64,000 bases of DNA, from the NCBI GenBank assembly GCA_028826165.1, contig JAPDFW010000142.1, forward strand, positions 1 through 64,000, in the 5' to 3' direction. The position numbers were made by a program, and so were the translations under genes. The notes below the pieces were generated by a model, which was given only the letters and a program-made list of their open reading frames with translations, did not search any database and was not told the origin of the DNA. This stretch comes from Anaeramoeba ignava BMAN. Its lineage: Eukaryota > Protista > Anaeramoebae. Each line of letters opens with the position of its first letter. Position 1 is the stretch's first letter. Shown piece by piece: positions 34,736 to 37,717 of this stretch.

Positions 34736-36245
34736 TTAATTTTCTTTTTTATCTTCTTTTTCTTTTCTCTAAATTAATTGAAAAAAAATAATATATAAAA
34801 AATGTTTTTTTTTAATTTAAAATTTTTTTTGGAATTAAAGTAAATTTTTTAAATTACTTGAGCTTCTCTTATTTCAGCAAGACTAACATTAGTTAATGAT
34901 CTTACTCCAAAAAGAAGATATTTATCAATCCAATCTGCATATTTATCAAGAATTGGTTCAATGAAGAACTGATAAATTTTTTATCCGATTTTTATTTTGA
35001 TTTTAATTTTAATTTTAATTTTAAAATGAATTTTAATTTAAATTTTAGATTTTAATTTTAATTTTAATTTTAATTTTAATTTTAATTTTAATTTTAATTT
35101 TAATTTTAATTTTAATTTTAATTTTAATTTTAATTTTTATATTAATTTTAATTTTAATTTTAATTTTTATTTTAATTTTAATTTTGATTTTAATTTTGAT
35201 TTTAATTTTAATTTTAATTTTATATTTTATAAATGGATTTTATACTCTCCACATTAAATTTGCTCCCTATTTAAAATAAAATATTTTTTAAAAAAAAAGA
35301 AGAATAAATATAAAATTTTTCAATTCAAAAATAAAAGAATAAATAAAATTACATTGAAAAAAGAAGGAAGTTGTAACCAAATCAAAAAGAGAACCTTTCT
35401 ATTTAATTAATAAAAAAAAAATAAAATAAAATAAAACAATTAAATTATTCTAGTAATAAAATCATTATCTTACAATTCAAAATAAAAAGGTAACCAACTA
35501 ATGACTAAAAAAAGTTAAAATTAAATTAAAATTAATATTTATAATTAAATTAAATTAAATTAAAATTAAAATTACTAAAATCAGCAAAATATTCAACAAC
35601 AGTAAAAAATCCACTAAAAATATTTTTGAAAATTATATTTTAAAATTATATTTAAAATTAAATTATTGTTTTTATTATATTATTTTTACGCAATTGTCCA
35701 ATCTATTTTAAACAAAAAATGCAATTAAAATTATTAAAAATTTAAAAAAAAAAAAGGAAAATAAATAATTACAAATCTAGATTAAAAAAAAATATAAATT
35801 AAACTAAACAAAAAGAATAAAGGAAGAAAAAGTAAATAAAATACAAGCTAAAAAAAAATGAAGTTAAAAAAATTTTTTTTCAATTATTTTTTAAAAGGAA
35901 AAAAGACAACTAACCCACTAAAAAATTCAATTTAAAATTTTAATTTAATTTTAATTTTAATTTAATTTAATTTTAATTTAATTTTAATTTTATTTAATTT
36001 TAATTTAATTTAATTTAATTTTAATTTAATTTTAATTTTAATTTAATTTTAATTTAATTTAATTTTAATTTAATTTTAATTTTAAATTTTAATTTTAATT
36101 TAATTTTAATTCAATTTAAAATTTTAGTTACTTCTGTATCATCATCTTTTTCTTCAGTTTTAATTGCTTTATAAGAACGATAAGCAGGATAAAGAAAAGA
36201 AATTAACATAGAAAATGTTTTACTTGCTGCATAACCAACTCCCAT
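34736..36245 (-). CDS. TB2/DP1/HVA22 (REEP5/Yop1-like) ER-shaping protein, 138 aa, 11 exons including micro-exons
   Basis: Exons 36245-36132, 35917-35915, 35847-35845, 35776-35773, 35702-35690, 35613-35576, 35504-35474, 35398-35353, 35266-35246, 34968-34858 and 34768-34736, every junction GT-AG. They splice to MGVGYAASKTFSMLISFLYPAYRSYKAIKTEEKDDDTEWLIYWTIAGFFTVVEYFADFIISWLPFYFELKVLFLIWLQLPSFFNGANLMWRFFIEPILDKYADWIDKYLLFGVRSLTNVSLAEIREAQRKEKEDKKEN*, matching the family signature and ending in a KKXX ER-retrieval motif. Confidence 0.9.
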
Positions 36246-36338: not shown

Positions 36339-37717
36339 ATGGTTAGAATAAAACAAAGATATTTACTTGTTGAAATTATTTGGAAAGATGCTGGTGTTGA
36401 TAAAAAATTAAATTCTCAAATTATTTTTAATTCAATTAGACAAAGTATTCAATATCATTTTGGTGAATTTGGAAATGCAAAATATCTTGAAAGATTAGCA
36501 AGTAATAATTTCTAAAATTCAAAATTAAAATTAAAATTAAAATTAAAATTAAATTTAAAATGAAAATTAAAATTAAAATTAAAATTAAAATTAAAATTAA
36601 AATCAAAATCAAAATCAAAATCAAAATCAAAATCAAAATCAAAATCAAAATCAAAATCAAAATTAAAATTAAAATCAAAATCAAAAATTAAAATTTAAAT
36701 TAAAATCAAAATTAAAATAAAAATTAAAATCAAAATCAAAATCAAAATCAAAATTAAAATCAAAATCAAAATCAAAATTAAAATCAAAATCAAAATAAGA
36801 AAGAAAATCAAAATCAAAATCAAAATCAAAATCAAAATCTAAATCTAAATCTAAATCTAAATCAAAATTAAAATCAAAATCAAAATCTAAATCAAAATCA
36901 AAATCAAAATCAAAATTCAAAATTAAAATCAAAAATCAAAATCAAAATCAAAATCAAAATCAAAATTAAAATTAAAATTAAAATCAAAATCAAAATCAAA
37001 ATTAAAATCAAAAATTAAAATCAAAATTAAAATAAAAATCAAAATGAAAATCAAAATGAAAATCTAAATTAAAATCAAAATCAAAATTAAAATCTAAATT
37101 AAAATTAAAATCAAAATCAAAATCAAAATCAAAATCAAAATCAAAATCAAAATAAATCAAAATCAAAATCAAAATCAAAATCAAAATCAAAATCAAAATC
37201 AAAATCAAAATCAAAATCAAAATCAAAATCAAAATCAAAATCAAAATCAAAATCAAAATCAAAATCAAAATCAATATCAAAATCAAAATCAAAATCAATA
37301 TCAAAATCAAAATTTAAATCAAAATCAAAATTAAAATTTTAAGTTAAATATTTAAGTCCTTTGAAAAATCTAACAATTATAAGATGTGCAAGAAAAAATT
37401 TAAGAGAAGTTTGGAGTTCAATAACTTTTCTTCGACAAATTAATACAAGAGAATGTATTTGTAGAGTTTTACATACTTCAGGAACTATTTTATCTTGTCA
37501 AAAACAAGCAATTAAATATTCTGAAGATTCATTATTAATTACAACAGTAGCTTTTAAAAATCAATTTAAATCAAATAAAAATGAAATTGAAAATCAAAAT
37601 CAAAATGAAAATCAAATTGAAAATGAAAATCAAAATGAAAATCAAAATGAAAATGAAAAAGAAAAAGAAAAAGAAAATGGAAAAAAAAGAAAGAAAATGA
37701 AATTTTTAGATTTTTAA
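36339..37717 (+). CDS. POP5: RNase P/MRP protein subunit Pop5 (Rpp14/Pop5 family)
   Basis: Exons 36339-36501 and 37344-37717. MVRIKQRYLLVEI, IRQSIQYHFGEFG, IKYLSP...IIRCAR...VWSSITFL...VLHTSGTILSCQK. The intron is AAAAT(C/T) microsatellite. Confidence 0.9.

What the first reader, a model, noticed from the sequence alone, without database searches (positions are those of the whole stretch)
34736..36245. Hidden 11-exon REEP/Yop1 gene with consecutive 3-, 3-, 4- and 13-nt micro-exons
Seen in sequence: the gene is invisible to the ORF track. The family-conserved WLxYW motif is only obtained by splicing TAG|TGG|GT (35917-35915, W), TAG|CTT|GT (35847-35845, L), TAG|ATTT|GT (35776-35773) and TAG|ATTGGACAATTGC|GT (35702-35690), separated by introns of 67-76 nt. 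All 10 introns are GT-AG, the phases close to 417 nt, and the product ends in KKEN (KKXX). Established knowledge: TB2/DP1/HVA22 proteins carry DDxQWLxYW, and 3-nt exons are rare and usually isolated. Inference: a run of single-codon exons implies pure intron-definition splicing or strictly ordered splicing in this lineage. Skipping the 3-nt exons would also delete single residues in frame.
Basis: partly seen in the sequence, partly recalled or inferred. Interest (0 to 1): 0.9.

Follow-up and report, generated by a model that had tools for sequence, protein, structure and literature searches.

The report
Single-codon exon chain in REEP gene
In the anaerobic amoeba Anaeramoeba ignava, the most conserved motif of a small ER-shaping (REEP/Yop1) protein is encoded by four tiny exons of 3, 3, 4 and 13 bases; a second gene copy keeps this layout and the public annotation misses it, which points to unusual splicing and intron gain in this organism.

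Summary
On the minus strand, 36245-34736, eleven GT-AG exons (114, 3, 3, 4, 13, 38, 31, 46, 21, 111 and 33 nt) close to 417 nt with no internal stop.

The gene is not hidden. GenBank lists it as KAJ5066463.1, a receptor expression-enhancing protein of Anaeramoeba ignava.

- **Paralog.** A copy on contig C130 has the same 114/3/3/4/13/38/31 layout, with identical TGG, CTT and ATTT micro-exons. Its introns are no more similar to the window's than shuffled sequence.
- **Annotated path.** The annotated splice path cannot exist in that paralog.
- **Family alignment.** Homologues need W-L-x-Y-W with no gap.

A. flamelloides encodes the motif in one exon, so introns 1-5 are specific to the A. ignava lineage.

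Genome-wide, pairs of TTAG-NNN-GTAA 40-70 nt apart occur 135 times. For spacers of 4, 5 and 6 nt the counts are 2, 2 and 1.

The parts
36132..36245 (-). Exon 1 (114 nt, ATG at 36245; encodes residues up to ...YPAYRSYKAIKTEEKDDDTE)
   Evidence: Alone it matches Pfam PF03134 positions 1-18 (E 0.018). It is 100% identical to residues 1-38 of KAJ5066463.1.
35918..36131 (-). Intron 1 (214 nt, GTAACT..TTTTAG), mostly (AAATT/AAAATT)n microsatellite; specific to the A. ignava lineage
   Evidence: Absent from the A. flamelloides homologue.
35915..35917 (-). Exon 2, TGG (Trp), 3 nt, phase 0
   Evidence: Identical TGG flanked by AG and GT in the paralog.
35848..35914 (-). Intron 2 (67 nt, GTTAGT..TTTTAG)
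35911..35917 (-). Alternative 7-nt exon TGGGTTA (donor GTTGTC at 35910), inferred as the exon used by the public model KAJ5066463.1, which gives EWVNW
   Evidence: Inferred by comparing the P0001 sequence with path [7,13]. In the paralog the same read-through gives TGG GTT TGA, a stop.
35845..35847 (-). Exon 3, CTT (Leu), 3 nt, phase 0
35777..35844 (-). Intron 3 (68 nt, GTATTT..ATCTAG)
35773..35776 (-). Exon 4, ATTT (Ile plus the first base of Tyr), 4 nt; required to keep the frame
35703..35772 (-). Intron 4 (70 nt, GTAATT..AAATAG)
35690..35702 (-). Exon 5, 13 nt (completes Tyr, then Trp-Thr-Ile and two bases of Ala); also present in the public model
   Evidence: The paralog is identical at 11 of 13 nt.
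35614..35689 (-). Intron 5 (76 nt, GTAAAA..TTTTAG)
35576..35613 (-). Exon 6 (38 nt); the intron after it sits at the same position and phase as in A. flamelloides
35474..35504 (-). Exon 7 (31 nt, ..ISWLPFYFEL); a 31-nt exon also in the paralog and in A. flamelloides
35353..35398 (-). Exon 8 (46 nt)
35246..35266 (-). Exon 9 (21 nt, GANLMWR); a 21-nt exon also in the paralog and in A. flamelloides
34858..34968 (-). Exon 10 (111 nt), the amphipathic C-terminal region
34736..34768 (-). Exon 11 (33 nt including the TAA stop at 34736-34738); the product ends KKEN
   Evidence: The A. flamelloides homologue ends KKDN.

Best explanation
This is a functional REEP/Yop1-type (TB2/DP1/HVA22) gene of Anaeramoeba ignava. 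It encodes a 138-residue ER-membrane hairpin protein with a C-terminal KKxx signal. Making the mRNA requires removal of ten short, extremely A+T-rich GT-AG introns. Five of these were gained in the A. ignava lineage inside one ancestral exon, and four lie within 23 nt of coding sequence. As a result the family's W-L-I-Y-W motif is assembled from exons of 3, 3, 4 and 13 nt. Shown here: the gene structure, its conservation in a paralog, the family membership and the lineage-specific origin of the introns. Inferred: the 3-nt exons are included in the mRNA. Also inferred: adjacent introns must be removed one after another. A 3-nt exon leaves no room for an acceptor complex and a donor complex at the same time, so each splice creates the longer upstream exon that the next splice needs. 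The public model (EWVNW) is most likely a gene-prediction artefact.
For: 1. The model closes: 417 nt, no stop, all introns GT-AG, and introns 2-8 of 67-86 nt. These lengths bracket the 76-nt mode reported for this genome.
2. Organism and identity: P0001 is KAJ5066463.1, A. ignava REEP. It scores 88 bits on PF03134 over the full profile, positions 1-77.
3. Paralog G000:C130 (L006 1501-3085) has exons of 114, 3 (TGG), 3 (CTT), 4 (ATTT), 13, 38, 31, 40, 21, 111 and 60 nt. They close to 438 nt without a stop. All 5 AG dinucleotides in the 379 nt between its exons 1 and 6 are the predicted acceptors. Exon 1 is only 75% identical in DNA and the introns are near shuffled-sequence identity.
4. Enumerating every GT-AG path shows that only [3,3,4,13] and its subsets that skip a 3-nt exon exist in both copies. 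The annotated [7,13] path does not exist in the paralog.
5. In an alignment of homologues the public model has a one-residue gap and V-N where the family has L-x-Y. The micro-exons fill exactly that gap.
6. A. flamelloides encodes the motif in one exon but shares the 31-nt and 21-nt exons and the intron positions after exon 6.
7. Genome-wide, pairs of TTAG-N(k)-GTAA 40-70 nt apart number 135 for k=3. The counts are 2, 2 and 1 for k=4, 5 and 6, and 24 for k=2, all 24 in one satellite.
8. An ankyrin gene shows 7 consecutive 3-nt exons.
9. A hydrophobic hairpin at residues 44-85 is followed by an amphipathic segment.
Against: No transcript evidence was obtained. The public annotation gives a different solution, and its authors had RNA-seq mapped to the genome, though whether it fed the gene models I could not establish. 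pN/pS between the paralogs over exons 1, 9 and 10 is about 0.9, so selection is not demonstrable outside the domain core. Exon 8 of the paralog is uncertain. The pattern tool's own reversed-pattern control for k=3 is 108 against 135 observed; I consider that control confounded by coding and low-complexity repeats. The two 3-nt exons are not needed for the reading frame.
Confidence: 0.85

Rival explanations
1. The public 9-exon model is the real main transcript. Exon 1 joins a 7-nt exon TGGGTTA (donor GTTGTC), which joins the 13-nt exon directly, giving EWVNW. On this view CTT and ATTT are just intron sequence.
For: It is the deposited annotation, it keeps the frame, and P0001 still passes Pfam at 88 bits.
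Against: The path is impossible in the paralog, where the read-through gives TGG GTT TGA and there is no alternative donor. It removes one residue and replaces L-x-Y of the most conserved motif. It leaves unexplained why AG-CTT-GT and AG-ATTT-GT are conserved at the same spacing in both copies, against chance expectations of 1e-2 to 2e-3 each. The same annotation demonstrably fails on the paralog, where KAJ5067348.1 skips exons 2-8 and loses the whole hairpin.
Confidence: 0.06
2. The micro-exons are real but variably included. Skipping one or both 3-nt exons gives in-frame isoforms that lack Trp and/or Leu, so the locus produces a mixture.
For: The paths [4,13] and [3,4,13] keep the frame in both copies. 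Very short exons are generally hard to recognise (established knowledge; PMC4317164 abstract).
Against: TGG and CTT are identical in both paralogs although the introns have diverged completely, and the residues they encode are conserved in the family. This argues for regular inclusion. No isoform data exist.
Confidence: 0.07
3. The locus is a decaying or unexpressed pseudogene, and the apparent exon chain is a relic.
For: pN/pS is about 0.9 on exons 1, 9 and 10. No RNA evidence was obtained.
Against: Two copies each keep an open frame across 11 exons and 20 intact GT-AG pairs, while their introns have drifted to background similarity. The domain core is well conserved. The C-terminal KKxx signal is shared with A. 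flamelloides.
Confidence: 0.02

Closest known systems
REEP5/DP1, yeast Yop1, plant HVA22 (Pfam PF03134, TB2/DP1/HVA22)
   Same: Full-length Pfam match, the YPAY...DDxxWLxYW motif, a hydrophobic hairpin followed by an amphipathic helix, and short size like the HVA22/REEP1-4 type.
   Different: Nothing unusual in the protein. Only the gene structure is unusual: 10 introns in 417 nt of coding sequence.
Conserved ultra-short micro-exons that are routinely misannotated in plants (Nat Commun 2022, PMC8831610; MEPDB, PMC12409088)
   Same: Exons of 15 nt or less that encode conserved domain residues, are missed or mis-placed by annotation pipelines, and can be recovered by homology.
   Different: As I recall, those micro-exons are mostly single and flanked by normal exons. 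Here four lie in a row, two of them single codons, separated by introns of about 70 nt, and the genome holds more than 100 adjacent 3-nt pairs.
Animal 3-nt micro-exons: CYTH1 (PMC6314551) and the three consecutive micro-exons of RPS24 (PMC11162997)
   Same: A 3-nt exon can be spliced by a normal spliceosome, and consecutive micro-exons exist.
   Different: Those are alternative, regulated exons within long introns. Here they are apparently constitutive, encode an invariant motif and sit between minimal introns.
Schistosoma micro-exon genes (MEGs) (from my own knowledge, not checked here)
   Same: Runs of many consecutive very short exons.
   Different: MEG exons are 6-36 nt, symmetric, and lie in fast-evolving secreted proteins. 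Here the chain includes 3-, 4- and 13-nt exons in a conserved housekeeping gene.
Recursive splicing at zero-length exons (AG|GT ratchet points) in Drosophila and human (from my own knowledge)
   Same: Stepwise removal of adjacent intron segments, in which each splice regenerates a usable 5' splice site. This is the likely way a 3-nt exon is handled.
   Different: Recursive sites leave nothing in the mRNA. Here 3-13 coding nucleotides remain at each step.
Introners / introner-like elements (PMC9860276, PMC12130899)
   Same: Lineage-specific bursts of intron gain.
   Different: No family of near-identical copies was found for these introns. The best non-self matches are 68-77% identical, which is about the background for such A+T-rich DNA.

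Membership tests
TB2/DP1/HVA22 (REEP/Yop1), Pfam PF03134 | Domain match above Pfam's gathering score | tested here: met
Exon 1 alone scores 15.4 bits on positions 1-18.
TB2/DP1/HVA22 (REEP/Yop1), Pfam PF03134 | Conserved YPAY...DDxxWLxYW motif without a gap | tested here: met
   Exon 1 plus the codons of exons 2-5 read ...DDDTE-W-L-I-Y-W-T. In alignment A1 the homologues have W/L-L-x-Y-W at this place, and the public model has a gap there.
TB2/DP1/HVA22 (REEP/Yop1), Pfam PF03134 | Hydrophobic hairpin followed by an amphipathic helix | tested here: met
   A Kyte-Doolittle scan shows a hydrophobic block at residues 44-85. The highest helical hydrophobic moments are at residues 91-118. This is a crude test.
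TB2/DP1/HVA22 (REEP/Yop1), Pfam PF03134 | ER localisation and membrane-curving activity | not testable with these tools
   The only indirect sign is the C-terminal KKEN, with KKDN in A. flamelloides.
Spliceosomal micro-exon | AG acceptor with an upstream T-rich tract and a GT donor directly flanking the short exon | tested here: met
   All four micro-exons have these flanks, in both paralogs.
Spliceosomal micro-exon | Conserved in a homologous gene while the flanking introns diverge | tested here: met
   Exons 2-4 are identical at 10 of 10 nt and exon 5 at 11 of 13 nt. The orthologous introns have identities of 0.33-0.75 against shuffled means of 0.33-0.69.
Spliceosomal micro-exon | Present in the mature mRNA | not testable with these tools
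The junction k-mer search was left out because a joined sequence has no reference.
Recursive splice site (zero-length exon) | AG immediately followed by GT, with nothing retained in the mRNA | tested here: not met
   Between 3 and 13 coding nucleotides lie between each AG and GT, and they are needed for the motif and the frame.
Introner-derived introns | Many near-identical copies of the intron elsewhere in the genome | tested here: not met
   Searching the genome with introns 2-5 gives only 68-77% matches to other A+T-rich intron arrays. Intron-to-intron z-scores are mostly below 3, with a maximum of 5.0.
Schistosoma-type micro-exon gene | Most of the coding sequence in symmetric micro-exons of a secreted, fast-evolving protein | tested here: not met
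   The 4- and 13-nt exons are asymmetric, and the protein belongs to a conserved membrane family.

The most novel reading that the evidence does not exclude
A. ignava holds well over a hundred places where introns of about 70 nt lie exactly 3 nt apart, with chains of up to at least 7 single-codon exons. The REEP gene shows that such chains are real coding exons, and that they can arise by inserting introns between existing codons without adding residues. If so, this lineage has two unusual properties. Its spliceosome routinely and constitutively processes 3-nt exons by obligate stepwise splicing. It also has an intron-gain mechanism with a built-in 3-nt register next to an existing intron. Neither is described in the Anaeramoeba genome papers I could read.
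Probability: 0.6. Interest if true: 0.9.

Novelty: new variant of a known kind. Interest (0 to 1): 0.8.

Why it matters
The protein is ordinary; the gene structure is not. Exons of 3 nt are known as rare, isolated and usually regulated events. A constitutive run of 3-, 3-, 4- and 13-nt exons that spells an invariant motif is different. It is kept in two diverged gene copies, in a genome with a roughly 70-fold excess of introns exactly 3 nt apart, and would be a natural test bed for three questions:
- How small can an exon be?
- Does splicing of neighbouring introns have to be ordered?
- How do new introns arise next to old ones?

This gene is the best calibrator for the many ankyrin and TLDc 'single-codon exon' candidates in the genome. 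Here the micro-exon residues can be checked against a conserved family motif, and the A. flamelloides homologue shows the uninterrupted ancestral state.

There is also a practical point. The public A. ignava proteome contains models damaged by this feature: both REEP copies are wrong, and one has lost its whole membrane domain.

Tried and rejected
1. **RNA evidence.** The neighbouring Pop5 gene was searched only from 36348 on.
2. **Joined product.** It was assembled only inside scripts to check frame and stops.
4. **Metagenome scan** with P0001: no relative found.
5. **The search for homologous proteins** with P0001: only itself and one fungal homologue.
6. **Introner hypothesis.** No high-identity copies of the introns and no clear similarity among introns of the chain.
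7. **pN/pS** between paralogs on the in-frame exons 1, 9 and 10 is about 0.9 and is uninformative.
8. **Reversed-pattern control.** The pattern tool's built-in control ranges from 29 to 120 across k. I judge it confounded by coding and low-complexity repeats, so I used the k-profile of the forward pattern instead.
9. **Literature.** The Anaeramoeba genome paper and its supplement, the intein paper and the A. pumila preprint do not mention micro-exons. No paper in the library links Anaeramoeba with micro-exons.

Full report
**What is in the sequence.**
Read on the minus strand, the stretch 36245-34736 contains an ATG-initiated 114-nt exon. It ends in codons for ...YPAYRSYKAIKTEEKDDDTE. After it come, in order, TAG|TGG|GT, TAG|CTT|GT, TAG|ATTT|GT and TAG|13 nt|GT, and then exons of 38, 31, 46, 21, 111 and 33 nt.

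- All ten introns are GT..AG.
- The exons sum to 417 nt.
- The frame is open for 138 codons up to TAA.
- The product ends KKEN.

Introns 2-8 measure 67-86 nt. The 518 nt between exon 1 and exon 6 are about 8% G+C and hold only 7 AG dinucleotides, five of which are the predicted acceptors. Given this composition, the expected chance counts of AGTGGGT, AGCTTGT and AGATTTGT in that stretch are 2e-4, 2e-3 and 1e-2.

**Whose gene it is.**
The translation of exon 1 was searched against 1.8 billion representative proteins. It found a 137-residue protein, 100% identical over all 38 residues. This is GenBank KAJ5066463.1, 'receptor expression-enhancing protein [Anaeramoeba ignava]'.

The window therefore comes from A. 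ignava BMAN. The genome paper describes that genome as 80.65% A+T, with 32,108 introns of modal length 76 nt and 8.14% G+C. The introns seen here fit that description.

The public protein scores 88 bits on Pfam TB2/DP1/HVA22 over the whole profile. It has a hydrophobic hairpin followed by an amphipathic segment. So the gene is not hidden, and the family assignment is secure.

The public version corresponds to a 7-nt exon TGGGTTA with donor GTTGTC, joined straight to the 13-nt exon. That path skips CTT and ATTT (path [7,13]).

**The decisive comparison: a paralog.**
Searching the genome with the second-best hit (KAJ5067348.1, also A. ignava) located a second copy on contig C130. Its sequence shows the following, in order:
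- a 114-nt first exon;
- TAG|TGG|GT, TAG|CTT|GT and TAG|ATTT|GT;
- TAG|13 nt|GT, identical to the window's 13-nt exon at 11 of 13 positions;
- exons of 38, 31, 40, 21, 111 and 60 nt.

These close to 438 nt without a stop.

All five AG dinucleotides in the 379 nt between its exons 1 and 6 are the predicted acceptors. Exon 1 is only 75% identical in DNA to the window's and exon 10 only 50%. The corresponding introns differ in length, and their identity is at or near that of shuffled sequence. The duplication is therefore old, and the ten micro-exon bases with their flanking splice signals have been kept while everything around them drifted.

I then enumerated every GT-AG path between exon 1 and exon 6 in both copies. 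The only paths present in both are [3,3,4,13] and its versions that skip a 3-nt exon. The public [7,13] path cannot exist in the paralog, where the read-through gives TGG GTT TGA.

The public model of the paralog jumps from exon 1 to exon 9. It loses the whole hairpin and no longer matches Pfam. This shows that the annotation pipeline fails on these chains.

**Origin of the introns.**
The A. flamelloides homologue (KAJ3431357.1, locus L005) encodes RSYKAIK...DDDTELLIYWTVVGFF... in one uninterrupted exon. It nevertheless has the intron after that exon at the same position and phase as intron 6 here, followed by a 31-nt exon, a 43-nt exon and a 21-nt exon.

Introns 6-9 are therefore older than the split of the two species. 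Introns 1-5 are absent from the only other Anaeramoeba homologue examined, so on that evidence they are specific to the A. ignava lineage, and they predate the duplication. Loss in the A. flamelloides lineage is not excluded.

The motif has the same length in both species. These introns therefore lie between pre-existing codons and added no residues. That does not fit a simple tandem duplication of 'intron plus codon'.

**Is this a property of the genome?**
I counted pairs of TTAG-N(k)-GTAA lying 40-70 nt apart in the 42.8-Mb assembly.

| Spacer k (nt) | Pairs found |
|---|---|
| 2 | 24, all in one 27-nt satellite on C123 |
| 3 | 135, spread over many contigs |
| 4 | 2 |
| 5 | 2 |
| 6 | 1 |

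None of the 100 listed first triplets for k=3 is a stop codon (read by eye).

Reading frame does not constrain the distance between two introns. The excess specific to 3 nt therefore says something about how these introns arise, not only about what is tolerated.

The tool's reversed-pattern control (108 for k=3) does not show this excess. Those controls swing from 29 to 120 across k, and I judge them dominated by coding and low-complexity repeats. This is a caveat.

One of the k=3 places, on C60, is an ankyrin-repeat gene. Seven consecutive 3-nt exons (GAA CAT TTT CTT TAT CAA GAT) precede a 93-nt ankyrin exon that scores 27.4 bits on Pfam Ank, and two more 3-nt exons follow it.

In the window itself, a TLDc gene (Pfam 48.8 bits) appears to use 3-nt exons AGG (8633-8635) and ATA (8702-8704).

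Earlier first-stage notes of this scan list similar ankyrin and TLDc cases. One note (s1-689482) reports the same REEP motif on another piece of this genome, probably the C130 copy. Those notes were leads only. What I tested is stated above.

**How it most likely works.**
The protein is an ordinary reticulon-like ER-shaping protein. The gene needs ten short introns removed.

A 3-nt exon cannot carry both an acceptor complex on its upstream AG and U1 on its downstream GT, because U1 pairs with the last three exon bases. Neighbouring introns must therefore be removed one after another. Each ligation lengthens the upstream exon for the next step, much as in recursive splicing. This follows from established spliceosome geometry and is inference, not something shown here.

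**What could not be done.**
No RNA evidence was obtained:
- The run search found only low-share holders.

The joined spliced product was assembled only inside scripts for frame checks. It was never submitted to a search, alignment or fold, and the junction k-mer search was left out.

The literature I could search holds no report of micro-exons in Anaeramoeba. Known parallels are:
- conserved, misannotated plant micro-exons (PMC8831610);
- 3-nt exons in CYTH1 (PMC6314551);
- three consecutive micro-exons in RPS24 (PMC11162997).

**Verdict.**
- The gene is already known, but its micro-exon chain is mis-annotated.
- The wider pattern of introns 3 nt apart is the interesting part and needs RNA confirmation.

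Noticed in passing
window 8103-8960 (+): A TLDc-domain gene (Pfam TLD, 48.8 bits on 8103-8546) seems to continue through two 3-nt exons in phase 1: AGG at 8633-8635 and ATA at 8702-8704. The donor lies after 8547 and the last acceptor before 8800. The first two introns share their 3' ends (atctttatgRaaatag).
   Followed up: partly
G000:C130:64121-65705 (L006 1501-3085): Paralogous REEP gene with the same 3/3/4/13-nt chain. The public model KAJ5067348.1 (101 aa) skips exons 2-8 and has lost the Pfam domain. Its intron 8 is a 491-nt (TTTAA/TTTTAA)n microsatellite. My 40-nt exon 8 is uncertain.
   Followed up: yes
L005 2001-2777 (A. flamelloides, GCA_027625915.1 JANTQA010000048.1): The public model KAJ3431357.1 jumps about 7 kb after its second exon. 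The likely true next exons (31 nt at about 2395-2425, 43 nt at about 2606-2648, 21 nt at about 2757-2777) lie close by and match the A. ignava exon layout. This species has an intron inside YPAY|RSYK that A. ignava lacks.
   Followed up: partly
G000:C60 about 118,400-119,300 (L016 600-1560, minus strand): Ankyrin-repeat gene with seven consecutive 3-nt exons (GAA CAT TTT CTT TAT CAA GAT) before a 93-nt Ank exon (L016:895-987, Pfam Ank 27.4 bits), and two more (TCT, AAA) after it.
   Followed up: partly
window 36339 onward (+): A divergently transcribed Rpp14/Pop5 (RNase P subunit) gene starts about 93 nt upstream of the REEP ATG. Pfam scores 33.4 bits on 36348-36500. Its first exon runs into a long (AAATT)n-type repeat, presumably an intron.
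   Followed up: partly
G000:C123:146884-148081: Tandem array of a 27-nt unit (TTAGAAGTAAATAAAATAGTTTTAAAT-like). It accounts for all 24 matches of the k=2 control pattern.
   Followed up: no
window 35918-36131 and 34969-35245 (-): Introns 1 and 9 of the REEP gene consist almost wholly of (AAATT/AAAATT)n microsatellite (2-3% G+C). Such repeats probably account for the low-share 'holders' returned by the sequencing-run search.
   Followed up: no
G000: C129:92264-92443, C93:961816-962040, C60:1344202-1344330, C73:287082-287243: Four further TB2/DP1/HVA22-like loci in the genome carry the domain in one open frame. Only C129 scores above the Pfam cut-off. The micro-exon chain is therefore confined to the C143/C130 pair.
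   Followed up: partly
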